The notes under the pieces are model-generated. The model saw nothing but the letters and a program-made list of their open reading frames with translations, was not told where the DNA came from and did not search any database. Shown here one piece after another: positions 11,345-40,092 of a stretch of DNA of 64,000 nt (position 1 is its first letter; every line of letters begins with the position of its first letter). Both the position numbers and the translations under genes were made by a program. The stretch comes from Ophelia neglecta (Eukaryota): contig OZ260663.1 of assembly GCA_965285935.1 (NCBI GenBank), positions 22,196,001 to 22,260,000 on the forward strand. Reading direction: 5' to 3'.

Positions 11345-14300
11345 AAAAGATATCGCCAAGATCCTAAATATAACTGGCGCTTGGCGGAGGAACCAGAGGT
11401 TTATTGCCAATATCGGGATGCTCTAGAGGCTCAACTACATATTACTTGCTCGAATAACAATATCATCAAAACAGACGAGGATTTGAACAATGATTACCTT
11501 GGTGTTGTTAAAGCTATTGAAAACGCTGCCGAAATATCAATCCCAAAACGGAAAGGTGACTGCATCCTTAGGTCATACTGGAAAACTGGAGGTATGAAAG
11601 ACCTCCACCGTGATATGATGCGATTTCGGGAGATTCGGAAAGTCGACGGTAAACCCAGAGGAAACGAGTCCAAGACTTTTCGCGACTATAAAAATAGCAA
11701 AAGAGTTTTTACGGCTAAAAATGAGAAATTTAGAAATACAATCTCAGACAAATCGGTTTAACGACATGGACCTTGATCGAAATAAATAATGGCGCATATT
11801 GAAGAGAAATAAAAATTCTCCACCGACAGGAGCGCCCCCCCCCCCCCCCCCTCAACATCAATGGTAACATAAATGCCAACACTGATGAAATATTGGACAG
11901 TTGGACAGAGCATTTCAATGATTTATATACTCCAAATGCTTCCCCTAATTATGATATAGTAAATAAGCTGATAGTCGAAGGTCAAATCCAAGAGTTAGTG
12001 AGAAAAACGGAAAGGGAAGCTGATGAGATAATGGGTTCCCCCATTACATCGTCGGAAGTTTTTGACATTCTAAAAAAAAATTGAAAAATAACAAAGCCGG
12101 GGGTCATGACAGACTTACTTACGAACATCTGAAGCTTGGAAAATTTGACCTGTCACATCGGCTTGCTGATCTTTTTAACTTTAGGTATGAACGAGAATTC
12201 GTCCCTCTTGACATGAAACACGGTATTATCTTTACCCTATATAAAGGAAAAAGAAAGTACGAAGATGACCGACGTAACTACCGAGGCATAACTTTGCTAC
12301 CGGTGATTTACAAAGTCCTAGAGAGAATAATTTTAAACAGGCATCTATCATGGCTAGAAGTAAATGATATCGACTTTCCCAACGAAATGCAAAACGCTTA
12401 TCAAAAACAAAAGTGTTGCCTAATGTCAGCACTCACGGTCCAAGAAGCGGTGTGTTATTGTCAAGAGCAAAACTCACCGGTGTATTCTTGCTTCCTCGAC
12501 GCCGTAACGGCCTTTGACTCTGTATGGCATGATGGTCTTTTTTTCAAGTGACATGAGCTAGGCTTTAAAGGAAAGTGCTGGAAACTACTGCGAAATAGCT
12601 ACAAAGACATGACAGCACAGGTATCTATTAACGGTGAGCTCTCGAAATACATACCTGTGTTACAGTCTTCTCGGCAAGGATCCATACTGGGAGCCTGGTA
12701 TTATATTGGATTTAATAACGACCTAATACACAAACTTAAACGTTCTGGTTTCGGGGTGTCCATTGGGGATCTGTACTGTGGATCTCCGATACAAGCTGAC
12801 GATCTCGCACTACTTGCACTTTCACCGATCAGATTGCAGACAATGATTGATATATGCGTAGATTATAGCAACAGATGGCGCTTTGACTTTAATCCAACCA
12901 AAACTAAAATTGTCATATTTGGAAAGAACAACCAGATTAATACAAAATTTCCTTGGATGCTAAACGGTGCCACTCTAGAAGTAGTCGATACTTTTATTCA
13001 CCTTGGTATTCTTCTTAATAGAAATAACAACTCCCATGAGAGGACTAAAAGTGCTGCGAATAAACTAAAGTGATGTCTGGCATCTCTCAGGTCTTACGGA
13101 GGTCACTCTGAGGTTTTAAACCCGTTAACAACGTCTGCCCTGTATAATTCTATCATTTTACCCCGATGCATGTTCGGTTGCGAGCTTTGGTGCCAGTTAT
13201 CAAGTGGAGAAATGGACATATTGGAAAAGGCCCACAGGTATGCTGGCAAGTCCATACAAGGCCTCCATCCGCGAACTAGGACTATTGTTGCTTACGGTAT
13301 GTTTGGTTGGATCCCCTTTAGGAACTATCTTGACATGAAAAAACTCACATTCCTTGGGAGAATGTGCCGACTGTCAGAAAAACACCCGCAAAATAATCCA
13401 CAAAAGACTTACCGAACAGTCAAAAAACGACCGGACCCTGCGCTCGTCTTTTCAAAAGATATGGTAAATCTGCTAGTGGAACTGGAACTGAGCAGTAACA
13501 TAACAAGCTATCTGACAGGCACTCCATGGCCAGCGAAATGTCAATGGAACAAAATAGTGTCTGGTGCTCTTATTAAAAGGGAGCAATGAGCAATGAAATA
13601 GATGTAAAGAACCCTGTGTTGACGATTGTCTAAAACTATTGCAAGCTGGAACCGTTAGTATATATTGGTGTTTGTGTCTAAAATACCCAAGGTTAAAGAA
13701 ACCTTTGGAAAATACAGCGAAACTCGTTGCTCGGTATGGTTTGTCAAGTCAGTGTCAATTATGCGGAAAATATTCTCTAGACTCCGTTGCACACGTACTT
13801 GTGGAATGCGCCGAGGTTAGTGAAAAAAGATATTTTTTCTGGACTATAGTTTTCAATGACTTTGAAGTGAAAGACAGTGTTTTTTTATTTAATCTTCAAA
13901 AAAAAGATTTGTCAATGGTTATTTGCGGGCTTTTAGAACTAGACTCCAATATTGTCAGGGAAAATTTGATAAGCCTATTTGCAAAAATATTCCACGGAAC
14001 TGTTCACGATATGGTCTGTAAATTTATTTAAGACAGGTATAGACATACAATAATGTCCTTCGTCGAATAATTTATACACGGTTTAAACTAGGTCCACTAT
14101 AACGTATACTGTAAATGTTCTCATTTCGATATTCCATACAGGTTATTTTTTTTTCTATTTTTTTTTATGTATATGTGTGTATGAGGGGCTTATGAATGTG
14201 TATGTATATGTTTATGTGCGTATATATATAAGTGTGTATGTATGCCAGTGCGCGTACATATGTATGTATATGAGGGTGTGTGGGCTTGGCGTTTATATAT

Positions 14301-14380
14301 AATTGTCTCTTTTACTATCCATTAATGTAATATATACATTATACTCTCCTACAAATGGAGGAAATAAAGTCTATAATATA
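11345..14380 (+). mobile_element. 5'-truncated, disrupted non-LTR retrotransposon (RTE-X-like LINE): RT plus C-terminal CCHC region and 3' UTR
   Basis: Consecutive ORF fragments 11381-14031 are broken by stops and frameshifts. Motifs: KAGGHDRLTYEHLK, NYRGITLLPVIYKVLE, CFLDAVTAFDSVWHDGL, RQGSILG, SPIQADD, FNPTKT, HLG, CQLCGKYSLDSVAHVLVEC. The TG/TA-rich 3' UTR ends in a ctcc-tacaaat-ggag hairpin plus AATAAA. Confidence 0.9.
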
Positions 14381-14383
14381 CGG

Positions 14384-15995
14384 TTTTTTTTTTAATTGAT
14401 TTATGTTTATTCTCCTCAACCTAATGAGAGCTTTCATACAAAATGTTTAACTATTTACAATTATATATATGCATAATTGGTCGTCTATTTAACTAATGTT
14501 CAGACACTAATGCATTGATAGTATAGTTTAACAGTAGTCATATTTAAACATGGCTTTAGCAAATGGACCGAATTTACTGGCTACAATCTTCAACAAAATA
14601 CACTTCGATTCATCATCTATAATAACTATTCCAAGTAATGTTCTAACTAGATCATCCATGTCGTCGATGTTGAACAAAGTCACTGATTGTAGGACTGGCA
14701 GTTCGTTAAATATGTCAGTCCACATTTCGTCGCGATTCTGTTTAAGGAATATGCATCCAGTTTCGCAAAACATATGATGAAAAGGACTGACAATGAGCTC
14801 CTGACACAGTTGACATGAAAGTATTAGGGCTGAATTGTACAGGCTAAATAAAGTTATCAGGTTCAGGCATTGGTTTTTGATGGAAATATCTCCTTTCGCA
14901 AGGACATACAGTTCTAGCGGGCGAAAGTTTGAGAAAATATTGGAAAAAATATTAAGATCTTTTTCTGTCTTTGAAAGTTCCCCTATGCGGTCTAATTCTT
15001 TCTGCCGGATAGCTCTTTTTACCAAGCATTTCCATCCGGATTTCGTGACACCCTTATCAAAATCACCTACTCCAACACAAAAATGCTTGTCCAGACTGTA
15101 TTTAGACAAAATGCGTAGCGTGTCAGGGATGAATCCCCTCTGCTGGCAATCTGTGTCCAATTCAGCCAGTCTCTTGTGAAATATTGCACTTGCCAAATGC
15201 CTCTCTGGGGACAAGGTACAAAGTTTGTGCAAAAATACAAGCTTCTTTATTTCGAGCTCACATTCGATATTAAACCATCCCAGGGTTCCGAGAGCAATAA
15301 TCGTGTGAGTGCGTTTCGGCATGCCCTGTATCGATTTGGCTGCATACCGGTGCATGACTTCTAGTTCATTAATTTCAGCCTTCGAAAGATCGTTCCAGAG
15401 TTCGGACCCATGGAGAGCTGATGGGACAGTAATATGGCGATATAGTCGGGCTGAGGTGAGGGGATGGAGTCCACCAGCTGACACACCGACACCGGCCATC
15501 CCAGCAAGCTGACACCTGCCTTTAATGGCTGCTGCATGAGTCCTGTCGGCAGACTTGAAGTCTGTGGAGAGTGCTATGCCAACATGAGTTTCGGTGTACG
15601 CTTCTTCAACCTCCATGTTTCCGAGCCACCATTCGCGCCAGCTCTTATTGACCGTGAGCTGGCGTTTGGTTTCTCCAAAAACTAGAACCGAGCTTTTTTT
15701 TGCTGAGAACTTTAAGCGCCACTTCCTGGCGTATTTGTCGGCGGCGTCAAGTAAAGTTTGGAGACCGTTGGGGGACAGTGAAAGTAGCGCGCTGTCGTCC
15801 GCAAGTGTCGGACTCGCCAAGTCCAGCTCATCCCACCTCAAACCAACCTGAGTTTGCTGTATCGTCTCGTGGAAATCAGAATAAGCGATCGCATGAAAGA
15901 GGGTCGATAGTATTCCGCCTTGTTTAATGCTCCGAGAAATTGTAAAGCTGTTGGATAATTCTCATTAAGGTAGCAACACTACTTTCTACTTTGTA
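14384..15995 (-). mobile_element. 5'-truncated non-LTR retrotransposon (RTE-X-like LINE), C-terminal part of ORF2 still open
   Basis: The frame is open from about 15958 to the stop at 14528: SIKQGGILST...LASPTLADD...KFSAKKS...HVG...LHGSELW...CQLCQELIVSPFHHMFCETGC. The 3' end has AATAAA and a poly(A) tail (T run at 14384-14393 on the + strand). Confidence 0.9.
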
Positions 15996-18900: not shown

Positions 18901-21026
18901 TTCTGGGTCTTGACGATTTCGGAATGATTTAATGGTCTATTCTTGACTTTGTCTACTATCTGACTTGTCCGCCGGATATCCAATCCCGTTTTATCATCTT
19001 ATAATTTTTCTATTTATACATTTTTTTGGGAGGAAATATATTCTCCACTTTAAATGTTCACTATGGAGTTTCAGTACAAGTTGACACTTGTAATTTCATA
19101 TACGACCAACATTTTCTTTGGTTATACCTAAGAGCTATTGACAACGTATTGCGAATAGTATTCTAATAGCCATTCTCTAATGCATTTTAGTGAATCCGGA
19201 AAAAGTGGGATAATCGTGTTTCAGTATTGGCTGCTCAGGAATTGTACCTTATTACTCTTTTCTCACATATATTCGTTTTACATAACATAGTGTATTGTAT
19301 TACTGAATATTAGTATTGATTTTTGTTAGCATATACAAACCATCTTTACATCACATTCAAAACCCTTCTAGATTGAATCCTTCAGGTCAAAAACATGGAT
19401 CTGAACATCAGCGCAATATCCATATCTTCAGCGTTTGTTGAGTTATGTCAATTTTACAATTTACACCAATATACTGTGGCCTTATTGAATTTCAGGTAGT
19501 CAAAAGGGCCATAGAGGCCTGAAACCATGTTAGGTCATTTCCTTATTCAATCTAGACACCAAAATAAAGACTCCACTCGCTTATTTTGAAATCTGTCCCC
19601 GACTATTGAATTGACTGCACTTATATGCTTTTTAAGACTTTAGGTGCTATCCTATCATGTGATGTGTGTTTTTCTTGAGGTTCCTTTTTTTGTGCCATTT
19701 ATATTTCGTGGTTTTGTTTGTCCATGTGCCAATTAATTCTTGTATTATGCTTTTAACTATACATGTACATTGATTTTTACATGACGAAAATAAATAAAAT
19801 CAAAATCAGTCCGTCCTCTTGAAATAAAATATGCAAATATCTTTGATATTATACTAGGAACACTCTCTTGTGCCAATAGGACAGTTAATTTGGCAATACT
19901 TGAAAGTAAAAGGCATTTTTCTATTAGAAGAAATACCGCACACATCTTGGTACGACAGTGTGAATGTGAGGTTTGGGGGGGGGGGGGTTCAATTGCATCG
20001 GGTTTATATTTATTGAGCTCCTTGGGGGCGATAATTCATTTATTGCCTTACCTGACTAGCCTGATAAGACTTCTTATTAATTGGACAATTAAATTTATAT
20101 GTTCAAATACAATTCAATGTAAATAATTAGCTTGAAAATAGCCTAAAAATAAAACCGTTTATGTTTGAGCAATATAATATCCATTATCCGATACGATGCA
20201 GAGGGGTTTTGCTTCAGGCCTACACATTTTGGAGAAGTGACTTTTGCTTAATCTGATACTATAAGTGATAATGACGAGTGTCGGTTTAATCTCCCATTAA
20301 ATAAATAAATAAAAGGAAGCATGGCTCTAAAGTTAGAAACAAATATATGCCTTAAATTCCGGGTAGGCCCCACGTTTATTGCTTAAATGATTGGGGATAT
20401 CTCTGACTATCATTAATGGGCACGGTAGAGGAAATAATTCATATAAACTCTATACATATAGGCATGAGAAGAATCTTTCATATTATAATAAACTCATTGT
20501 GCTAATCAAAGAATGCTTTAACATTAAATGCGTTTAAGGCTTTTATGAATTCAGCATTAATGAATTGGTCCATTACAACTTTTTTTATGACATGCAAACA
20601 TACATTTTATTTAAATTACGACATAAATTATTTACATAACATGTAAGTGAATTAATTTGAAAACCACAAAAAAAATGCTAAAATTTTCAAAATGATTATC
20701 TCTAATGATCCCAATGTCTATGTAACAATATGAATGATTAACATATGTTAATGTTCTAGGTTTTGATTCACTTATCACTTTGTATTATTCTTTCCTCTAC
20801 CCTTACCTGAACTACTGCATTGTTTGGGGAAGTGATTGCAAATCCTATATTGATCCTCTTCTAAAAATCCAAAAACATGCTTTAAAACCAATTAGAAGTG
20901 AAAAGAATATATAATGCATTATCCAGTGATTGAAATATATTATAGACTCTCGCTGCCACATATGGCTCTCCTTCCGTCAATGATTAAAACTGAGGAGAGC
21001 GTCCGAAATCATACATCGAACGGAAG

Positions 21027-24000
21027 ATGGCAAGTCAAGTAGCTGGACAAGGGGCAACCTATGATGATGGAGCGGGCTTTTACGCCAATTACGAACAAAT
21101 CCACCAAAATATCTACGAGAATGCTGAGCCATGTGTTCTTAAGGCATTAGGTACGTAAACTAGAATAGCATATACGTTTTACAGTTATATTGGCGTAAAT
21201 ATTCTATTTAGCAAACGTGTGTTTGAGTATATTGAGTGTCTAGGAAACATACTAGGGCGGCATGATAGAGGAGTTAACTGTAAATGAATACCCATAAACC
21301 TGAATGAACAAAGCGTCATATATGGAGTACTTCACTCAGGACTGTCCTGTGAGTAAAGGTAGAAATTGTACTCATGAAACATCCGTTTCTATAGCAAAAG
21401 CGAATCTTTAAGTTTGAATTGATATTGTCCTCATATATCTTAACATAGCATTTTAACCATGATTGAGAAAATCATCAGTACTGAGAAAGACACGAATAAT
21501 AACAACAGATTTATTGAAATACATTGTCTTCATTTTGTCCCTGTAGAAGATTTGCCATTTAAGGGAGACCTTTTCGTAATATGTGATTACGGCGCAGCGG
21601 ATGGTGGTTGCTCGAAGGATCTTCTCACAAAATGTGTTGGTGAGCCTGCATTATCCGGATACATACAACATTTATATTAAAGTTTATCCATCGTCCAATA
21701 AATTGTGTTTAGTAAAGGAATAAATAATTGGATTAATGAATTGGTGGTGCAATCAAATTCTTGCCATGCTTTCGGTTATTTCTTTTGTTCATTGCTTTCT
21801 TGTGGAACATATCACTGGGATGACTTGAACAATATAGCCCTCTCCCCCTTCACATTAATTGGTTTCACTTTTCAGGGATACTGAAGAGGAATTACGGCGA
21901 GGGACAACAAGTCCAAATCGTGTATGAAGACCAACCAACCAATAGCTTTAACACCCTGTTCCTAGGCTTAAACGGTAGTTCAAATAATACAGATTTAAGA
22001 ACATCAGTATTTTCCTTAAATCAAGACGTACATTTTCGAACGCTTAAGGGATATATAATATATTTCATAATACCATTAATATTGTTTGCATTGCCTTAAG
22101 GACTTTTGGATGACCCTTTGCCCTACCTGGAACAGCCAGGTGTCTATGTCAGCGCGATCGGGAGGTCATTCTTTAAGCAATGTTTACCCGATAACTCTGT
22201 ACACCTTGGATTTAGCTCAAGGGCCTTCAATTGGTTGTCCCAACGGTAAACCATTCCAGCAAACAGTGTCATGAATTATATTCAGTTATGATGAACATTT
22301 TATTTTTTTAAATCGCCATATGCTGGAAACTTGTGCATATGCATTTAATTTCATGTGATTTGAAACTGCACACCGCTGCCAGATAATTATTGATTATTAT
22401 AATTCCTAAAAGAGATTTTTTAACCATAGACGGATAATTCTGTGTAGGTTTTTATTAGAATGAGGAAGCCTCTAACATGATCCGGAAGTCTTGATGTGTA
22501 CATTCTTAATTCTAGGCCTTGTTATATCAGGAACGCTCTTACAATAACTGGTAAAAATGTGGACGCCAATGAAAAAAAGTTATTTTTTGAGCAAGCGGAA
22601 AAGGACTGGTCAAGTATACTACTTCATCGAGCTCGTGAATTAGCACCAGGTGAAATTGACTGGATCTTTGCTAGTAGAAAATATATTATAGAACTTTTTT
22701 TCAAGAAAAGACATTTGTTATATTTGCCGAAGCCAATAAATCATATTCGATGTCATCAAGATTGTGAAAAAGTATATGAACATCCGCTAAGGTAGCCTCC
22801 TTGTTTAAATAATTACGAAAGAATGAGAAAATGTAAAGATAAGTGTTCATTTGAATTTTTGGCGTAGCAGTTTGCATCTCAGTCAAACTAAGCAAACTGT
22901 TAGAAGATCCAATAAGTATGACAATATTTTCCAGGTGCGTCCTTGGTGGTGGTTATCCCCGGAGATAACCCTGAGCTCAGGATCGCAGGGCGGATGAAGG
23001 TGTATGAAACACTTGACTCGGTGTGGAGTGACATGCGAAATGAAGGAATAATCACGCAGGTAGGAATTAACACAAGCTCCCAGTATTTCCATTTGTTCGT
23101 ACGATACGCCAATGATATATATATGGGATTGTCGGGTTTAGAATGAGCAGGCTGTAGACTTACTACATTTAAAGTTCATTTTGGCAGTGCTATCGAATAA
23201 GTATATATCCAATAATTAATGTCTAGGTGAATAATCTTGTTTGGAGTGTACCGGCATGATAGTGGTTATTAAATGCTTATTAATCTATTTCATAGGTTAA
23301 TTGCGAAATAGGGCAACTCTTTATCTGCAAATTTTGAATGAAGGTCTAAGAGAAGGTATTAGTATAGCGTCACCGCCACACCCCCTCGAGGGACCGCGCC
23401 ACAAAATTAATTTCTAAGAACGCGGGCATCACTTTTCCAATTAGTTCATGATTTACTATCCCTAGTTGTATGTTACTGAGACTGAAAATCTGAAAATAAG
23501 ACCTGTTATTTGCGATGCTCGAATGAATATATAGGCCATTGTTGTCTGCTTGATTAAGCAAGCAACAATGAACGGACTGGATGAATCTGATCAGGACGCC
23601 CAAGATTAGCTCATCCAATTACTCGGGGACAAGGATAACATTATATACATTATATCAAAACTTATATCGCTTACTTGCCACTTTGATATATACAAAGTTT
23701 CATCAAACAAATGATATTGGCTGAGGGCAAAAGGTAACTATTTAGTTTATTGAATCACCAGATGTTGATTACTGGTTTGCGCTTGTGAAATTTAAAGTAG
23801 GCGCTCATCTGTCATCTATATAGGTTGCCTAACGCCCCGTAAAATTAGACGTTATTCACTCGAAATATTTACAAATTCAGCTTAAGTTATTTTTTATCTT
23901 ATGTGTATTTTCGTGCGGAAATTGTTTTAAAAGCGCCCTATTTACCATAAAAAATGGGCTAGAAATAAAACTGCACATTACTAGCGTTGACTTCATGTAC

Positions 24001-26479
24001 ATTAATTGGCGAATGTGCTGGTTACCCTAACGTTTCGGAAAGTTTTTCTCGAGCCTTTTTTATCGCACATTTCAGTACTTATTTTGCACTTAAAGCAGGA
24101 ATAATCCTTATAATTATGTAACGCTAATCCGTGCCAATATTATCTTGAGTGAAATGCATTTTGGCTGCAATCAAAAAATGCTGCCGTCGACCATGTTCCA
24201 GGGATCCTGGCTCCCCGAGTTAAAGAAACGAAGTTAGCCTAGTTTATGTCTAGCTATATTAAGTAGACTTGCTTTACCCTGATTAAATTACTTGAATACG
24301 AAACTGATTCTCTTGTTAAATACTATAATTAACCAAACCGGGGATAGTCCTGACTAGCGCATGAGAATAAGACCTAAGGAACGGACCATTAGATATCTAG
24401 GGGGGGGGGGGGGGCAGAGAACTTGGCTCTAGTCAGGAAATTTTTTTTCATGAACAAAGTTGACAGAAAATTTTTTTTCACCACAGAATCTGCCAGATTA
24501 TTTATTTTCTCTATATAATATGTTTTTTTACTTAAAAATAATAGACAGATTATTTTTATTATTTTTTCTGGCAGATTATTTTTTTTTTGAGAAAATCAAA
24601 GCCAGAAAATTTATTTTCATTTTTTTCTGCCCCCCCCCCCCCCCCTAGATATCTAATGGTCCGTCCCTAATGATATTTGTGAAAATCCAATACAAACTTT
24701 TTTTTAGGGAGGGGTTGGGGGGTGGGGAGTGTTCCGAAAAGAAAAGAACAATGTTCGTCTTTTGCTATAGACATACGTTGAAAATTTGAGAGCATCCCTA
24801 AGGAAGTAAGGCGTATATCAATGTAATGTGCATTCCAGATCCGGTGTACCTCCCAATCATGACGCAGCACATCACACATACGAAAAGAGAAACTGTACAA
24901 ATTGAAATATTCCAGTATTTTCAGCACTGAATACAAATAAATCACGGGCACGGGAACATCCTATACATTGTTCACTAATCTTTGGAAGTTTTATTGTCGA
25001 TATAAACACTAACTTTCCTGTTGTTAGTTGAACACGGAAGGAGGGCCACAATGGAACTGAATGGCTCGACATTTTATTCAAAAAAATTCGATGATCTCCC
25101 CAATTTTACATCACAGTTTGGGGCAATTTGACAATTTATGAGAGATAAACCCGCCCTTCCGACATGACACGCGAACCTCCGAAGTTTACTTTCGCCCGGT
25201 ATTTGCATAAACATTCTGAAAGTCTGACTGCCTGGGCTAGATGACCCGCAGAATATCTTTGGGCTGGTAGGCTAATATTACTTTTAATTTGATTTTTTAC
25301 TGAGAAAAACAATTGTTATAATTGAAAAGGTGAACAATCGGTAAAAAAATATATTAAAACAAAAATAAAAATAAATTCGCGTGCGCGCTTCACTTTTTAG
25401 AGATGCTCAAGACGCTAAATTAATACCTTTTAAGGCCTAACTGCCCTCTTCTCCGTACCGATGTCCTCAATTTTGTTATGAATCTTCGATACGAATATTG
25501 AATTTATTTTTGGACAAAGAAATTTGAAACGCACTGAGTTTTTTTATTGCATGCAATGACTGTGAGGAATTCTGAACATTTAGAAAGAATTCACAGAAGC
25601 AAGTGCCACAACCTACAGTCGTTCAGAAGCAGAGTTAAAAGCTCCTTTCTCAGATAGAAATTCAGAAGTGTACCAATCTGGCCTGAGACTAGTTTCTCTG
25701 CAGTGGATACACACTGAAGATCCTTTTCAAGTAAAATGGAAGGAAAATAAACAAAACGGTAATTCGATAATAATATCCTATATTGAATAATCTTAATCGG
25801 AATCTTCGAAGTTTCTCAACTGGTCGATATAGGTCACTGGCGATCAAAATTACCAAATGCCTTAATTTAAGTAATTAAGTGTTCACTTACTGCATGTGTG
25901 ATAGTTTTGGTTTTACGTAGGAGCCCTGGCTGCCAAGGAACACGCCAAGTCCTTCGCTGACAATATAAAAGCAGGAGGCTATCATGCTGTATATGAAGGT
26001 CTAGATAAAACTCGACAGGATGGAGAAAAACAAAAGATTATGGAAACACTTGCCTCAAGGTAATATCAGGTAGATAACGCTCAAGTGGGTCATCACTGTC
26101 AGTAAGACCCACTTCTCGCGTGATTGCATAGCTCACGTTAAATCCAATGGTGTCAACTGCTCGAAACGCGAGTTATGTACAGATGGGATGACACGAACAT
26201 TTTGAGTCTTTGGAATGATGAGTGTTTTAGTAGCTTAGTACATGATTACAGGATAAACTTGATAATTAGTTCTAAAGCTCCACCTCACAGTATTAGAATC
26301 CATGCAATATTTAAACAACTGCCAGTCATTAATTTAAGTTCCGTTCATATCATTGCAGGCGTTTACATGTGCCTCTTATATAATATTCCAGGTTTGTAGA
26401 TATGGTGGCAGAGGACCCAACTGGGTTTTCTTATGAAAGCGTTCATGCCATCATCCACATGAAAAAGATAAAAGAGTGA
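21027..26479 (+). CDS. SABATH-family (Methyltransf_7) SAM-dependent methyltransferase, 9 exons, 373 aa
   Basis: Exons 21027-21150, 21547-21639, 21876-21974, 22101-22245, 22516-22649, 22935-23059, 25584-25758, 25921-26059, 26392-26479. All introns are GT-AG, phases are consistent, and the 1122-nt CDS has no internal stop. Family motifs appear in order: G..FYAN, ICDYGAADG (SAM motif I), EDQPTNSFNTLF, GRSFFKQCLPDNSVHLGFSSRAFNWLS, QAEKDWSSILLHRARELAPG, MRNEGIIT, YSRSEAELKAPF. Confidence 0.9.
24378..24667. mobile_element. PIF/Harbinger-type (Tourist-like) MITE in methyltransferase intron 6
   Basis: TIRs ggaacggaccattagatatctag(G)n / (C)nctagatatctaatggtccgtccc; TAA target duplication at 24375-24377 and 24668-24670. 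Confidence 0.85.
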
Positions 26480-26630
26480 GGCATACAGCACTGGCTATGG
26501 TATGTAGTATAAAGTATATAGCGAAGTATAAAAAGAGGGAAATACAAAATTACTAAGGTGATACGCCGTCAAAATGTGTCTTACATATATACCATATATA
26601 TTGTACTACCAGAATCAAATTTCCAAAGTA

Positions 26631-27460
26631 TTAAAGGCTATTTGAATATTGGATGATTGAATTGAGACGATAATTTATCCTATTGCAGCGTATATCATAC
26701 AGCTATTCTTATGAGATTAATAACAGACATGAATAGATAAAAGTACAATTGCTTGATTACCATATTGTGTTTGAACTTGATGTTGTTAAGAAAACTGGTA
26801 CATTTAATCTGCATTAAATAACCGTTTGAACAATGATCGTGGTACCATATGTGCCTATCATAATTGGCCGTATGCATGTTTATTAACAATGATTCCTTTA
26901 CATCACAACACAATCGAACCATATATATTCTGCAATTCTACACATTTTACTCGTCATTAGCAAATCAATGTACTGGGGTTTTACATATTTAAGGGAAATC
27001 CATTAACTTATTGTTAATAACTTATTTCCTCAAACATCTGTTATCCTAAGTTTTAAAGGTTATTTGAATATTGGATGATTTAATTGAGAAGACAATTTAT
27101 CCTATTGCAGCGTATATCATACAGCTATTCCTATCAGATTAAAGGCAGACATGAATAGATAAAAGTACAATTGCTTGATTACCATATTGTGTTTGAACTT
27201 GATATTGTTAAGAAAACTGGTACATTTAATCTGCATTAAATAATCGTTTGAACAATGATCGTGCTGTCATATGTGTCTATCATAATTGGCCTATGCATGT
27301 TTATTAACAATGATTCCTTTACATCACAACACAATCGAACCATATATATTCTGCAGTACTACATTTTACTCGTCATTAGCATCTCAATGTACTGGGTTTA
27401 GCATCTCAATGTACTGGGTTTTTACATATTTAAGGAAAACCCATACTTATTGTTAATAAC
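26631..27460. repeat. Tandem direct duplication, unit about 420 bp, immediately 3' of the methyltransferase gene
   Basis: ttaaagg(c/t)tatttgaatattggatgatt...cctattgcagcgtatatcatacagctattc...cttattgttaataac starts at about 26631 and again at about 27053, with scattered substitutions. Confidence 0.9.
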
Positions 27461-35900: not shown

Positions 35901-38900
35901 TGTGTAAGAGGGAGCCTGTTGTTTAGGTCCCCATGACACTTGACCTATTTCCGGTGAATCCCTGTGTCATAGTTTCCTGCGTAAAACTTTGCTTGTTTTT
36001 CCAAATATAATACTGTATTTTGAAATGATAGAAAAAACTATGGGCAAGTAGAATTTTCTTGGGGCAGGTAGAAATTTTGGTCACCTGCCCTACTGGGGCA
36101 GGCAAAAAATAAAAATAATGTCAGGCCCTGAATATACAGGTAATTGGTGTTTAAAAATGTTAAGAATATTCTACTTTGTATTGTGAACACTCAACCTACA
36201 ATCAAGAAGTAAATATGATTCCATAGATTCATTAGCACCAAACAGGGAAGCATGAATTGGTATTAATTTTTTCGCTTAAAATAGACAGCACCCACCTTGA
36301 TTTCTTTTCTTGTTCTGGGAGCAAATACGGTGTCCATGGAGACGCCCGGGATGATATACAACCGGCTCAGCTGCTCATTCATTTTAAACTCAATATACTC
36401 ATCTTTATCTATAAGCTCAATGGCATCAAAACCAGTCTCCTCTAGAACCTAAGGTGAACATTAGCAAATTATTAGGTCAGGATTTTATTTAGTTTAATAC
36501 GCAACATTTGATCTTTAATAATTAAACAATCTAAATAACTTTTATAGATATTGATATAATATTTTCTCGATGATCCCTCTTGTAACAGTCAGCAAAATTT
36601 GATCTCCTGTTCTGAGGATTTTTATGATAAATGTCACTGTCTTTTTTGTCAATCTCCATCAGTACAGAGAATGTAGCACTGATACAAAGGCACAACAAGA
36701 AGAAATACTTCATTGATGGCTATGACACATACCTTGAGAGTTCGTGTTGCGAGTAGCCAAAGGGGTGCCCTCTTCTATTTATTATGGACATTGCACTTTA
36801 TTTTGATTAAACAATGCCAAGTACAACAAAAGCTGCCAAAAAATTTCAAATTACCAGCAAATAACTTGATGATCTATCCAGCTGCCTATCCATGTAAATT
36901 TACACTGGTTTCAGGCATTATCTCACTGAATAATGCATGTGGTTGTGGTGGCGGAAAGATTAACCGACACCTTAGACATCGAAAGTGGTCATGGACAGGC
37001 AAGCATGGCAACAAGCATCGATCTCTGTCATTATAGTCATGCATTAAAAGTCGGTTGTCTAATTCACATACTATAGGCAATGATACAAGTGGGATACATG
37101 ACAGACACTATATTTCTTGGCACACAAGCTTGATCCTTATGGGAGTATTGGGATTTGCCCCAAGCAATGCACTTTCACCTAGAATGCTAGGATCCATACC
37201 CATTTAAAGTTGCCAACTCATTGAAACTCATCATGCGGTCGGCCAACTATAGTTTGTGAATTTTCACTCTATTCCAAGCACTTACAATTAACAAGTTTTG
37301 AACCTTGATGATAGATATCAATCACAATAAATATCATATCATGTAAAATTAAACAATATTATATCTCTAGTTTGTAGCTACATATCCGGACCATCAGATA
37401 ATTAGTATGACTTGCCTCACGCATGGCACAGTCATGAGGGAGCTCCTCCTCATTGACCTTGCCCTTGGGAAAACCCCAGCTGGCTCTGGACCAGTAGCCT
37501 TGTACTAACAAGCACTGAAAAGATACATAGGTGTACAGCAAGCTCTTCATAAATAAATTGATTGATTGAATACCAGGCGATGCAAATCACTATAAAAAGG
37601 CAAAAACCAAGAGTCATAACAGTATAAAATTCAACAACAGTCGCAGTCCTAGAGTAATAGTTAGCATCGAGTGTTTAGATAGAAGTATAATAACTTATTT
37701 TTATCAGAGCTTTAAATTGATGAATGTTAAACCACTCTGAAAACAGAATTCATATGGAAATCTTGATGTATCAGTATTTTTCATAAATTTATATATCGCA
37801 TTTAGACTTTACTAAGGGAACTTTCACTGAAGTTAAAGACTATTGTTTCTGTATAAGGCTGAATATCCCCTACCTGTGTCAGGGTTGGGTCAAGTAGTAT
37901 AGCGCCGTAGGTGGGGACGGCCATCTTATACTCTCTCCAGGACTCCAGGATGGAGTCCACATTGTCTGCATGTTCTTGTAAGGTCGGGCAGTGTCGGAAC
38001 AGTGAACAAGTCAAGGACACACAGAGCATAACACAGAATAATAATTAAATGATAATAAAATTAATGCCAGCAATGTCCACCTGTTTAGATCACAACATCA
38101 CATTACAAGCTACCTACAGAGAATTTGTTTCAATTGTGTAGGTATATTTGAATGAAACTGTTAAATATCAAATACGAGGAAATTCCTCATTTTAACAGGG
38201 TAGTAACCATGAAATTGTTTTACAGATTTAAACTTATTTCATTCTCATTATGCATTGTTACCATCATAAATAGAAAATAGTAAATTTAGTAATGTGTATA
38301 TGTATACCAGGGTGTTCCTGTCCAAATTTAGTTCATTGGGAAATAATTTTAAAAGGAAGTCGACCACTCGTTTTGGCATTACTGAATACCACTTGTCCGT
38401 AGCTTCATTGCAGGCAGCGTTGTTTGATAGTTATAGATTATGGAGTTCTATGCTTTGAACTGTTAGACTTATAGAGCTGTGGACATATGAGTTCAACTTT
38501 GAGCTATCTGATAAGGTCGTTTATAATTATCGCAATTGTGACTGCTCCATCTGGCAGATAGTCTGCTATCTTTATGGAAATATTGCCCTAAATCAAGAAT
38601 TTGCCATGGCTAAATGCCACATTAATCATATATTTAACACTATTTAATATATGTAAGCATAAAGGCAAGGACATTTTGAAACACACTACATACAGGCCAG
38701 CACATCTTTTCATGTTGGCTGACCTTGGTACCATCAACGCCGCCATCGGACAACCATCAGCCCTTCCAAGCACCAGTATGATTATTTTATTGTTACTACA
38801 TACATATAAATGATCGGGTTTTTTGCCTAAAGGATATCTTGTGTTGAGAATTCCTTGATGCCATGAGCTTTCAGAGCAGGCGTCTCTTGACAATAGAAGT

Positions 38901-40092
38901 CCAAATAGAACCAATGAGCCAACTCGATTTGGAAAAACAAACGGATCAAGTCTTGTCGCTCCTCTTCTGGTATGTTTATGATGAAACGACTGAAACGAAG
39001 AAAAAAACATTACAAGTTTTATCACTTGACCTCTGATGAAAAGACCAATCCATAGTACATCAATTTCAGGTAGCCGTGATTTCAGATTTTGAGTTGAGTA
39101 AGACACCGAAAAAAATAGTGGTGAATATTTCTGCAAAACTGTTTTCAATACACCCTACAACGGTTTCATTGAGAATACCTTCACTGAAACGCCTAGCACC
39201 TTTAAATATGGGTTGTACTAAACAACGAAACCGGGCGAAACCGGGCGAAACCGAGCGAAACCGAGCATAAATATATAGAAGTGGGTGCCGAGGAGGGATT
39301 ATTTGGTTGTTTTAAAGCTACAGATATACTTCAAATTAAATATCTGTCATTTTATCATTGTTTTTTTGCTTAATTATACGATTGTTGTCTCCCGTCGATC
39401 GTATTGTCATGTCAGCCATTGGTGTATCCACGGGGCATGCGACCGAAAACCAACCCAAAGCAAGTTATATTTGGGGCATATAACAAGTCGTTTGTATTAC
39501 GCACTAATATAAATTTGCCTCCTTATCATTTTGGATTCTTATTTTGTTGATTTTATCCATATTTTGGACATTTTCGTAACATCTACCATCGAGATACGAG
39601 TGCTGCCCCCTACTGTGACTAAACTGTGGCATCCGAATTAGTTCAGGCATGCGCAACTCTATACAGTTGATTACTTCCTCCTTGCGATCGACGGGATCGG
39701 GAGACAACAATCGTATAATTTAGCAAAAAAACAATGATAAAATGACAGATATTTAATTTGAAGTATATCTGTAGCTTTAAAACAACCAAATAACCCCTCC
39801 TCGGCACCCACTTCTATGTATTTATGTTCGGTTTCGCTCGGTTTCGCTCGGTTTCGCTCGGTTTCGCTCGGTTTCGCTCGGTTTCGCCCGGTTTCGCCCG
39901 GTTTCGTTGTTTAGGACATGCGTTAAATATAGGCCTTAAACATATATGTGAGCGATAATATGGTGAGGCAATTGATTTATGTTCGGCCAAGTAAGTTATC
40001 AATAATAATTACCTGCATAAGTCATCTAGAATATGAGCAGGAATTTGGTGGATGATACTCTGTGTGTTTTGAGGGGTAGTCGGCACTTCCAT
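32932..40092 (-). CDS. DCP2: mRNA-decapping enzyme 2 (Box A + Nudix domain), 9 coding exons, 420 aa
   Basis: Exons 40092-40013 ([11 protein letters not shown]), 38989-38838 ([10 protein letters not shown]...[14 protein letters not shown]), 38001-37874 ([14 protein letters not shown]), 37514-37416 ([21 protein letters not shown]), 36448-36296 (VLEETGFD...PRTRKEIK), 35672-35560 ([12 protein letters not shown]...FFMVIPFVK), 34928-34781, 34120-33920, 33120-32932 ([17 protein letters not shown]...stop). Total 1263 nt, in frame. Confidence 0.97.
34303..34484. mobile_element. PIF/Harbinger-type MITE in a DCP2 intron
   Basis: TIRs gggctattccatt / aatggaatagccc with TAA on both sides. Confidence 0.75.
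35765..36130. mobile_element. hAT-like MITE in a DCP2 intron
   Basis: TIRs cagggcctgaca / tgtcaggccctg with subterminal tgccc/gggca repeats; the TSD is not clean. Confidence 0.6.
38002..38837 (-). other. U12-type (minor spliceosome) AT-AC intron of DCP2
   Basis: 5' splice site G|ATATCCTTT at 38837, branch site TCCTTGAC at 38017-38010, terminal AC at 38003-38002. Joining restores ...STQ-V-FRHCP. Confidence 0.93.
39210..39922. mobile_element. Foldback/MULE-like non-autonomous element with about 190-bp TIRs containing 10-bp tandem repeats
   Basis: The left arm taaacaacg(aaaccg[g/a]gcg)n...gtgggtgccgaggaggg...attgttgtctccc is mirrored at about 39699-39913. An 8-bp direct flank ttaaatat lies at 39202-39209 and 39923-39930. 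Confidence 0.85.

What the first reader, a model, noticed from the sequence alone, without database searches (positions are those of the whole stretch)
21027..26479. Intact, 8-intron SABATH-type small-molecule methyltransferase in an animal genome
Seen in the sequence: a complete 373-aa spliced CDS, visible only as fragments in the ORF track, carrying the ordered SABATH/Methyltransf_7 motifs. Established: this family methylates salicylate, jasmonate, IAA, gibberellins, nicotinate and xanthine alkaloids in plants, has bacterial and fungal relatives, and is not part of the standard vertebrate or Drosophila enzyme set. Inference: the eight spliceosomal introns and the DCP2/myosin V neighbours argue against contamination. 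This suggests a long-resident animal enzyme (ancient horizontal acquisition or patchy retention) for an uncharacterised pathway, for example methylated osmolytes, betaines, signalling or defence metabolites. It is the best candidate for an undescribed system in this window.
Basis: partly seen in the sequence, partly recalled or inferred. Interest (0 to 1): 0.78.

Follow-up and report, generated by a model that had tools for sequence, protein, structure and literature searches.

The report
Ancient invertebrate small-molecule methyltransferase gene
An intact nine-exon gene for a SAM-dependent small-molecule methyltransferase, from the family that holds plant SABATH enzymes and a mycobacterial fatty-acid methyltransferase, lies on this invertebrate chromosome. 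It is real and old in animals, but it is one of at least 44 such loci in this genome and has annotated relatives in other marine invertebrates, so it is an uncharacterised member of a known family, not a new system.

Summary
Window 21027-26479 (+) carries nine exons and eight GT-AG introns, giving 1122 nt (373 codons plus stop).

- **Family.** Exons 3-5 hit Pfam Methyltransf_7 in order, and exon 4 alone passes the curated cut-off. All nine exons tile full-length homologues from end to end.
- **Not contamination or recent transfer.** The gene lies on a 116-Mb contig, 12 kb from the genome's only DCP2 box A match. Introns 1-7 match all seven introns of two Lingula genes in position and phase. 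Three are shared with Nematostella and two with Branchiostoma.
The genome holds at least 44 loci with the family's core exon, 37 of them on contig C7, mostly in tandem arrays. Public annotations show relatives in corals, anemones, jellyfish, amphioxus, brachiopods, an annelid and krill, and in marine protists and bacteria.
- **Closest structure.** It is the mycobacterial fatty-acid O-methyltransferase (5F2K), not a plant SABATH.
- **Position in the family.** The gene is a divergent singleton, about 37% identical to the public homologues and 56-75% per exon (exons 1-5) to its nearest paralogues.

Substrate and expression are untested; no RNA runs were found.

Searches went exon by exon. No search, fold or tree used the joined protein.

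The parts
21027..21150 (+). Exon 1 (124 nt, start codon, ends in phase 1). N-terminal lid with G-A-G-F-Y-A-N-Y-E-Q-I-H-Q, which aligns with the Y-S-x-S/N-x-x-Q region of the family.
   Evidence: It is 56% identical to exon 1 of the C7:103 Mb paralogues. Its intron position equals Lingula intron 1.
21547..21639 (+). Exon 2 (93 nt). SAM-binding motif I, V-I-C-D-Y-G-A-A-D-G-G.
   Evidence: It aligns to V-I-A-D-Y-G-V-A-T-G of 5F2K through profile A1.
21876..21974 (+). Exon 3 (99 nt). Y-E-D-Q-P-T-N-S-F-N motif, with the acidic residue after strand 2.
   Evidence: Pfam PF03492 positions 52-74, E 0.021. Also.
22101..22245 (+). Exon 4 (145 nt). Family core: G-R-S-F-F ... S-S-R-A-F-N-W-L-S, including the conserved Trp.
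   Evidence: Pfam 31.8 bits, above the 29.8 cut-off. Best solved structure is 5F2K at E 1.2e-8, against plant enzymes at E 0.03 or worse.
22516..22649 (+). Exon 5 (134 nt). F-F-E-Q-A-E-K-D-W-S-S-I-L-L-H-R-A-R-E-L-A-P helix.
   Evidence: Pfam positions 148-178, E 0.14. tblastn identity to homologues is 41-55%.
22935..23059 (+). Exon 6 (125 nt, ends in phase 0). Variable segment of the cap domain.
   Evidence: Weak collinear HSPs with a Lingula protein and 45% identity to paralogue L009. Both flanking introns coincide with Lingula, Nematostella and Branchiostoma introns.
25584..25758 (+). Exon 7 (175 nt, the same length as in both Lingula genes).
   Evidence: tblastn identity to homologues is 33-43%. 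About 50 matches in the own genome, the best paralogues at 55-57%. Intron position.
25921..26059 (+). Exon 8 (139 nt). Carries N-I-K-A-G-G-Y-H-A-V where the conserved animal clade has T-R-T-W-S-N.
   Evidence: alignment with the C5:73.49 Mb paralogue.
26392..26479 (+). Exon 9 (88 nt, ends with TGA). Intron 8 before it is absent from the Lingula, Nematostella and Branchiostoma genes.
   Evidence: It is 50-52% identical to paralogue exons.
20908..20914 (+). TATATAA, 119 nt upstream of the ATG. A possible core promoter element, unverified.
   Evidence: Pattern match only. No RNA data.
26630..26635 (+). First ATTAAA after the stop codon, 151 nt downstream. A possible polyadenylation signal, unverified.
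   Evidence: Pattern match only. No RNA data.

Best explanation
This is a resident animal gene for a cytosolic SAM-dependent small-molecule methyltransferase of Pfam family Methyltransf_7. It belongs to the branch nearest the mycobacterial fatty-acid O-methyltransferase.

Shown:
- The gene is complete and canonically spliced.
- It keeps the family's SAM-binding motifs: D-Y-G-A-A-D-G-G in exon 2, Y-E-D-Q-P in exon 3 and G-R-S-F-F in exon 4.
- It keeps the conserved Trp of N-W-L-S in exon 4.
- It shares seven intron positions with brachiopod genes and three with a cnidarian gene.
- It is a diverged single copy inside a family of at least 44 loci in this genome.

Inferred, by analogy with solved family members:
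- The Rossmann-type half (exons 2-5) binds SAM.
- The N-terminal lid (exon 1) and the helical cap (exons 5-9) close over an acid substrate.
- The Trp holds the substrate's carboxylate facing the SAM methyl group.
- The methyl group is transferred directly, without a catalytic base, giving a methyl ester.

The most likely substrates are lipophilic carboxylic acids (fatty, hydroxy-fatty, isoprenoid or aromatic acids). The diverged pocket segment in exon 8 implies a specificity different from that of the conserved animal orthologue at C5:73.49 Mb.
For: - **Gene model:**
- **Pfam by exon:**
- **End-to-end tiling of homologues:**. Collinear tblastn hits.
- **Homologues are full-length Methyltransf_7 proteins:** E 1e-20 to 1e-48.
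- **Closest structures:** profile A1 matches 5F2K fatty acid O-methyltransferase at E 5e-50 over its whole length. Plant SAMT 1M6E scores 1.6e-29 over about the first 270 profile positions only. Exon 4 alone scores 1.2e-8 against 5F2K and 0.03-0.9 against plant enzymes.
- **Known activity of that enzyme:** it moves a methyl group from SAM to the carboxyl group of C8-C12 fatty acids and their 3-hydroxy acids (PMC9744835).
- **Intron positions:** 7 of 7 Lingula introns, 3 of 5 Nematostella introns and 2 of 7 Branchiostoma introns coincide in column and phase.
- **Tree:** animal sequences group together (96/99) apart from the bacterial clade (99/100).
- **Family size in this genome:**
- **Animal chromosome context:** DCP2 box A at window 38803-38991; contig of 115.9 Mb.
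- **Independent DNA contigs:** no disabling change.
- **Expression of relatives:** intron-free 1.3-1.8 kb transcript contigs encode full-length relatives in other animals, so the family is expressed there.
Against: - **No expression evidence for this gene.** No RNA run was found.
- **Polymorphism shows no clear constraint.** Six variant positions fall in 1122 exonic bases: R to K, I to V (two positions in one codon), S to G, and two synonymous. That is about 5 per kb, against about 4 per kb in unique intron sequence.
- **Diverged pocket segment.** The exon 8 segment that reads R-T-W-S-N in the conserved animal clade is K-A-G-G-Y here.
- **Carboxylate-binding Gln uncertain.** The N-terminal Gln of the solved enzymes aligns ambiguously to H or Q here, and it is absent from the conserved animal clade.
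- **No match for two exons alone.** Exons 1 and 7 on their own find no solved structure.
- **Weak tree placement.** Single-exon placement in the tree is unsupported, and exon 4 groups with a ciliate.
- **Other chemistries exist in the family.** Plant members include N-methyltransferases such as caffeine-type enzymes (one search list), so ester formation is not assured.
Confidence: 0.7

Rival explanations
1. The enzyme is an N-methyltransferase, or another non-ester methyltransferase. It would use the carboxylate only as an anchor and methylate a ring nitrogen of a pyridine carboxylate, making trigonelline or homarine, or it would methylate another heteroatom of a marine osmolyte or infochemical.
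For: - The family contains N-methyltransferases with solved structures: CkTcS, CkTbS, xanthosine and dimethylxanthine methyltransferases.
- This branch occurs in marine invertebrates, marine algae, a choanoflagellate and marine bacteria.
- A 2026 paper on homarine catabolism contains no occurrence of 'methyltransferase' or 'synthase' and cites only a 1982 study for biosynthesis, so the synthase seems unidentified.
- The carboxylate-binding Gln is not kept in the conserved animal clade.
Against: - The nearest solved relative by a wide margin is an O-methyltransferase of fatty acids.
- This gene is a diverged paralogue, not the conserved orthologue that a housekeeping osmolyte pathway would predict.
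- Nothing in the sequence points to a pyridine substrate.
Confidence: 0.12
2. The gene is a silent or decaying paralogue. It would be a by-product of the large family expansion that still has an open frame but is no longer expressed or selected.
For: - No RNA evidence.
- Variants are no rarer in exons than in introns, and three of five changed codons alter the residue.
- It diverges from the family consensus in exon 8.
- Many paralogues could cover its function.
Against: - 373 codons stay open in AT-rich DNA and all 16 splice dinucleotides are canonical.
- SAM motifs and the conserved Trp are intact.
- The observed changes are conservative, and indels occur only in introns.
- It is only 56-75% identical per exon (exons 1-5) to its nearest paralogues, so it has stayed open through long divergence.
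Confidence: 0.12
3. The stretch is contaminating DNA, or a recent horizontal transfer from a plant, alga or bacterium.
For: The family is usually described as plant-specific (bioRxiv 10.64898/2025.12.11.693594, listed). Close relatives exist in algae and bacteria.
Against: - Eight spliceosomal introns, seven at the positions of brachiopod introns and three at cnidarian positions.
- A 116-Mb contig with the genome's only DCP2 box A match 12 kb away.
- At least 44 loci on six contigs.
- GC content like its surroundings.
- A high-copy repeat of the host genome inside intron 6.
Confidence: 0.02

Closest known systems
Mycobacterium marinum fatty acid O-methyltransferase (MmFAMT; PDB 5F2K, 5F2N, 5F2O)
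   Same: - Same Pfam family.
- Best solved match of the homologue profile over its whole length (E 5e-50), and of exon 4 alone (E 1.2e-8).
- Shared motifs: D-Y-G, D-x-P-x-N-x-F, G-R-S-F-F/Y and W-L-S.
- It methylates carboxyl groups with SAM (PMC9744835).
   Different: - It is bacterial and has no introns.
- The residue before the conserved Trp is Gln in FAMT (changed to Ala in entry 5F2O) and Asn here.
- The N-terminal Gln region and the exon 8 segment differ.
- Exons 1 and 7 alone find no solved structure.
- The substrate of the animal protein is unknown.
Plant SABATH methyltransferases (for example Clarkia SAMT 1M6E, loganic acid MT 6C8R, caffeine-type N-MTs 2EFJ and 2EG5)
   Same: Same Pfam family (PF03492), the same SAM-binding motifs and the same conserved Trp. 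Like this family here, they are expanded in tandem arrays within genomes.
   Different: - Much more distant. The profile matches only about the first 260-310 positions, at E 1e-23 to 1e-29. Exon 4 scores E 0.03-0.9.
- The C-terminal cap does not align.
- Their substrates are plant hormones and alkaloids, which are not expected here.
Uncharacterised animal Methyltransf_7 proteins in public annotations. Examples: Lingula 'gibberellic acid methyltransferase 1/2-like'; Nematostella 'methyltransferase LUC1'; coral and anemone 'probable SAM-dependent methyltransferase At5g37970/At5g38780'; Branchiostoma; a Lamellibrachia fragment; krill.
   Same: - Same branch of the family.
- Same length, about 370-385 aa.
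- Shared intron positions: 7 with Lingula, 3 with Nematostella, 2 with Branchiostoma.
- They group together in the tree.
   Different: - Those proteins are 50-58% identical to one another's clade representative. This gene is only about 34-39% identical to them.
- This gene lacks their T-R-T-W-S-N segment.
- This gene has an extra eighth intron.
- Their names were given by similarity. I found no paper on an animal member.
Insect juvenile hormone acid O-methyltransferase (JHAMT)
   Same: A possible functional analogue: an animal SAM-dependent enzyme that esterifies lipophilic acids. A fly enzyme also makes fatty acid methyl esters (title of PMC4823748).
   Different: From my own knowledge, not tested here: JHAMT belongs to a different class I methyltransferase family, not PF03492. 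No homology is claimed.

Membership tests
Pfam Methyltransf_7 (PF03492; SABATH in the broad sense) | Match to the family profile above the curated cut-off | tested here: met
   Exon 4 alone scores 31.8 bits against a cut-off of 29.8. Exons 3, 4 and 5 match profile positions 52-74, 90-124 and 148-178 in order. The genome search gives 39.8 bits with neighbouring exons.
Pfam Methyltransf_7 (PF03492; SABATH in the broad sense) | SAM-binding motifs: Asp in motif I, an acidic residue after strand 2, and the Ser-Phe of G-x-S-F-Y/F | tested here: met
   C-D-Y-G-A-A-D-G-G (exon 2), Y-E-D-Q-P-T-N-S-F (exon 3) and G-R-S-F-F (exon 4) align with the same motifs in homologues and in 5F2K. The roles of these residues are taken from knowledge of plant SAMT, not tested here.
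Pfam Methyltransf_7 (PF03492; SABATH in the broad sense) | The carboxylate-holding pair: a conserved Trp in x-W-L-S and an N-terminal Gln | tested here: inconclusive
   The Trp is present (N-W-L-S, exon 4). The Gln position aligns to H or Q in Y-E-Q-I-H-Q, depending on a one-residue shift. It is not conserved in the animal clade.
Pfam Methyltransf_7 (PF03492; SABATH in the broad sense) | Full two-domain architecture: Rossmann-type core plus helical cap, about 350-390 aa | tested here: met
   The nine exon rows tile homologues of 370-386 aa from end to end. Those homologues match PF03492 over positions 9-335. No fold of the joined protein was made.
Pfam Methyltransf_7 (PF03492; SABATH in the broad sense) | SAM-dependent methylation of a small-molecule carboxyl group or ring nitrogen | not testable with these tools
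   This needs recombinant protein and an activity assay.
FAMT-like branch (bacterial fatty acid O-methyltransferase type) | Closer to 5F2K than to plant SABATH enzymes | tested here: met
   Profile A1: 5F2K at 5e-50 over its full length, against 1M6E at 1.6e-29 over about the first 270 profile positions only. Exon 4: 1.2e-8 against 0.03 or worse.
FAMT-like branch (bacterial fatty acid O-methyltransferase type) | Activity on medium-chain fatty acids and their 3-hydroxy acids | not testable with these tools
   The activity is known for MmFAMT (PMC9744835). Nothing is known for any animal member.
Metazoan clade of the family | Shared ancestral intron positions | tested here: met
   Alignment columns and phases (55,1), (92,1), (125,1), (185,2), (231,1), (346,0) and (404,1) are identical in this gene and two Lingula genes. 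Positions (125,1), (231,1) and (346,0) also occur in Nematostella, and (231,1) and (346,0) in Branchiostoma. None is shared with Salpingoeca.
Metazoan clade of the family | Placement of this gene inside the animal group in a tree | tested here: inconclusive
   Database animal proteins form one group at 96/99. This gene could only be tested exon by exon. Exons 5 and 7 fall beside the animal rows and exon 4 beside a ciliate, all without support. The full-length placement was left out.

The most novel reading that the evidence does not exclude
The at least 44 loci, this gene among them, would form an animal counterpart of the plant SABATH radiation. That would be a lineage-specific toolkit of small-molecule methyltransferases, built from an ancient metazoan gene. 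It would make methyl esters or N-methyl betaines used as osmolytes, pheromones or defence compounds. One branch could supply the still unidentified synthase of homarine or trigonelline in marine invertebrates.
Probability: 0.12. Interest if true: 0.75.

Novelty: new member of a known kind. Interest (0 to 1): 0.42.

Why it matters
Plant biologists describe the SABATH family as plant-specific. In the paper library searched here, every paper that names the Pfam family deals with plants or a plant parasite, apart from two protein-language-model preprints.

This gene and its intron map show that a sister branch has been in animal genomes since before cnidarians and bilaterians split. It was then lost from many lineages, and in this invertebrate it has multiplied to dozens of copies.

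No animal member has a known substrate. Marine invertebrates hold abundant methylated small molecules whose enzymes are unknown. These genes therefore form a concrete, testable candidate set. This single gene is only one diverged member of it.

Tried and rejected
1. **DMSP synthesis (DsyG/DSYE-type S-methyltransferase).** I rejected this. The paper gives DsyG as Pfam PF08241, a different family.
2. **A named homarine synthase in the literature.** I found none.
3. **Papers on animal members.** Searches by family name, accession or NCBI product names returned mostly plant papers and none on an animal member.
4. **RNA evidence.** No RNA run holds the stretch. The three holders are genomic DNA of one sample.
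5. **A close orthologue.** Exon 4 against 1.84 billion representatives gave at best 52-66% identity, mostly to exon-sized fragments. The profile search listed no protein nearer than about 39%.
6. **A second profile alignment (A2).** One Lingula protein plus the exon rows aligned badly, so I did not search with it.
7. **Single-exon placement in a tree.** It was unsupported.
8. **NCBIfam.** No match.
9. **Exons 1 and 7 against solved structures.** No match.
10. **Myosin motor and Nudix motif patterns in the window.** None found. DCP2 was confirmed another way.
11. **The two primary FAMT papers.** They are not held in the library.
12. **The joined 373-aa protein.** The joined CDS was used only inside scripts, to count its length and stops and to read the codons at variant sites.

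Full report
**The observation**

The ORF list and the raw sequence of 20900-26600 show nine coding pieces on the + strand. A script confirmed the junctions. The exons are 21027-21150, 21547-21639, 21876-21974, 22101-22245, 22516-22649, 22935-23059, 25584-25758, 25921-26059 and 26392-26479.

Every intron begins GT and ends AG. The phases are 1,1,1,2,1,0,1,2. The sum is 1122 nt, which gives 373 codons and one terminal stop.

I used the joined CDS only inside scripts, to count length and stops and to read codons at variant sites. No search, fold or tree was made with the joined protein.

**Family**

Pfam scanned exon by exon gives Methyltransf_7 (PF03492) for three exons:
- Exon 3: profile positions 52-74, E 0.021.
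- Exon 4: positions 90-124, E 1.1e-7, 31.8 bits against a cut-off of 29.8.
- Exon 5: positions 148-178, E 0.14.

The three matches are in order. Exon 4 searched against 1.84 billion representative proteins found 160 proteins at E 0.001 or better. The full-length ones are Methyltransf_7 proteins at E 1e-20 to 1e-48.

Laid back on the window by tblastn, these proteins give collinear HSPs on exons 2, 3, 4, 5, 7 and 8. In alignment A1 the nine exon rows tile five homologues of 370-386 aa from the first Met to the last residues. Exons 1, 6 and 9, which are weak against distant homologues, are 56%, 45% and 50-52% identical to the matching exons of paralogues in the same genome. All nine exons thus have homology support.

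**Which part of the family**

A profile of A1 against all solved structures matches the mycobacterial fatty acid O-methyltransferase (5F2K, 5F2N, 5F2O) at E 5e-50 over the whole length. Plant SAMT 1M6E and the other plant SABATH enzymes reach 1e-23 to 1e-29, over about the first 260-310 positions only. Exon 4 of this gene alone gives the same order: 1.2e-8 for 5F2K against 0.03-0.9 for plant enzymes.

The mycobacterial enzyme transfers a methyl group from SAM to the carboxyl group of C8-C12 fatty acids and their 3-hydroxy acids (PMC9744835). "SABATH-type" is therefore right only in the broad Pfam sense. The nearer relative is the bacterial fatty-acid enzyme.

The motifs D-Y-G-A-A-D-G-G, Y-E-D-Q-P-T-N-S-F, G-R-S-F-F and N-W-L-S are all present. 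Two points differ. The N-terminal Gln of the solved enzymes aligns ambiguously to H or Q. The segment that reads T-R-T-W-S-N in the conserved animal clade is K-A-G-G-Y in exon 8.

**Residency in animals**

The window is G000:C5:22196001-22260000, on a contig of 115.9 Mb in a 762-Mb assembly. The only DCP2 box A match in the genome lies at window 38803-38991 on the minus strand (72.3 bits). I could not verify the myosin V neighbour, because no motor motif lies inside the window.

I mapped the exact exon structure of five public genes onto their genomic loci and put the intron positions on one alignment with the exon rows. Introns 1-7 of this gene fall at columns and phases (55,1), (92,1), (125,1), (185,2), (231,1), (346,0) and (404,1). 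These are the same seven positions as in both Lingula genes, and the exon lengths nearly match (124/121, 93/99, 99/99, 145/151, 134/131, 125/140, 175/175).

Nematostella shares (125,1), (231,1) and (346,0). Branchiostoma shares (231,1) and (346,0). The choanoflagellate Salpingoeca shares none.

Intron 8 is absent from those genes. It is present in paralogues of this genome at C5:73.49 Mb and C9:70.98 Mb, and absent from the C7:78.1 Mb copies. This follows from HSP boundaries.

Shared introns across a brachiopod, a cnidarian and a cephalochordate mean the gene was in animal genomes before these lineages split. This rules out contamination and recent transfer.

**Distribution**

Named relatives come from the following groups:
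- Animals: corals, sea anemones, a jellyfish, two amphioxus species, Lingula, an annelid fragment and krill.
- Protists: green algae, a haptophyte, diatoms, Chromera, ciliates and Salpingoeca.
- Marine bacteria.

In a maximum-likelihood tree of 48 database proteins, all 16 animal rows fall in one group (support 96/99), together with three rows labelled protist. The bacterial rows form a separate clade (99/100). The tree is unrooted and its backbone is unresolved. It therefore cannot decide between old vertical descent with many losses and a very old transfer involving marine protists.

Transcript-sized contigs without introns encode full-length relatives in other animals, so the family is expressed there.

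**This genome**

The Pfam search of the whole assembly finds at least 44 separate loci with the core exon. Thirty-seven are on C7, most of them in arrays:
- 6.63-6.78 Mb
- 78.09-78.12 Mb
- 89.37-89.38 Mb
- 94.67-94.74 Mb
- 99.72-99.74 Mb
- 102.80-103.40 Mb: eight copies about 80 kb apart; the five I fetched give identical per-exon identities to this gene, so they are probably near-identical.
- 105.12-105.22 Mb

The orthologue of the conserved animal clade is at C5:73.49 Mb, 56-57% identical to the Lingula protein and to P0053.

The gene under study is a single copy with no near-identical paralogue. Its nearest relatives are the C7:102.8-103.4 Mb array, at 56, 60, 65, 75 and 61% identity for exons 1-5. 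A weaker paralogue lies 176 kb upstream at C5:22.04 Mb. Against all public proteins the gene is about 34-39% identical.

It may be the same family. I did not check that.

**State of the gene**

No RNA run holds the stretch. Three DNA runs of one sample give contigs that are collinear with exons and introns and show no spliced copy.

The exons hold six variant positions:
- R214K.
- I215V, through two positions in one codon.
- T224 synonymous.
- G325 synonymous.
- S361G.

Indels occur only in introns. Variant density is about 5 per kb in exons and about 4 per kb in unique intron sequence. This small sample shows no clear constraint, but no damage either.

A TATATAA lies 119 nt before the ATG, and the first ATTAAA lies 151 nt after the stop. 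Both are pattern matches only.

**Function**

The best-supported reading is a SAM-dependent methyltransferase acting on a small carboxylic acid, most likely a lipophilic one, with a specificity of its own. The chemistry (ester or N-methyl product) and the substrate are inferred, not shown.

I rejected a role in DMSP synthesis, because DsyG is a different Pfam family. A role in homarine or trigonelline synthesis remains a speculative rival. No synthase gene is named in the recent homarine paper.

**Novelty**

In the searchable papers that name the family, all deal with plants or a plant parasite, apart from two protein-language-model preprints. None describes an animal member. A 2025 preprint still calls the family plant-specific. 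Public annotations nevertheless already list animal members.

The gene is a new, diverged member of a known family. The ancient intron map and the expansion to 44 or more loci are the more interesting facts.

Noticed in passing
G000 contig C7 (6.63-6.78, 78.09-78.12, 89.37-89.38, 92.76, 94.12, 94.67-94.74, 99.72-99.74, 102.80-103.40 and 105.12-105.22 Mb); also C5:22.04, C5:73.49, C5:92.44, C9:70.98, C12:34.11 and C1:142.29 Mb: At least 44 loci carry the Methyltransf_7 core exon, 37 of them on one contig, mostly in tandem arrays. One array has eight copies about 80 kb apart; the five fetched give identical per-exon identities to this gene. How many are intact genes is unknown.
   Followed up: partly
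window 24377-24668: A 292-bp MITE-like element lies in intron 6, with 38-nt terminal inverted repeats that end in runs of 15 G and 15 C. Contig depth there is in the thousands, against about 20 beside it, so it is a high-copy repeat of this genome. A second repeat lies near 25048-25231.
   Followed up: partly
window 38803-38991, minus strand: The only DCP2 box A domain match in the whole assembly (72.3 bits). The decapping enzyme gene is therefore the downstream neighbour on the opposite strand.
   Followed up: partly
window 11381-15841: Long ORFs of 126-437 aa on both strands. The 156-aa ORF at 12081-12551 reads like the start of a reverse-transcriptase domain, suggesting retrotransposon copies upstream of the gene. 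This was judged by eye and not scanned.
   Followed up: no
tree of database proteins: P0182 and P0185: The krill (Meganyctiphanes) protein sits next to the Branchiostoma belcheri protein, with branches of only 0.15 each. That is odd for an arthropod and a cephalochordate. It could be contamination of one assembly or a transfer.
   Followed up: no
tree of database proteins: P0233, P0235 and P0220: Three rows labelled as protists fall inside the animal group: two 'COSAG02' single-cell assembly proteins and one transcriptome protein. Prey or contaminant sequences are possible.
   Followed up: no
L017 (Salpingoeca rosetta) and L015 (Branchiostoma belcheri): One intron position (alignment column 164, phase 0) is shared by the choanoflagellate and the amphioxus gene, but not by the other animals compared.
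   Followed up: no
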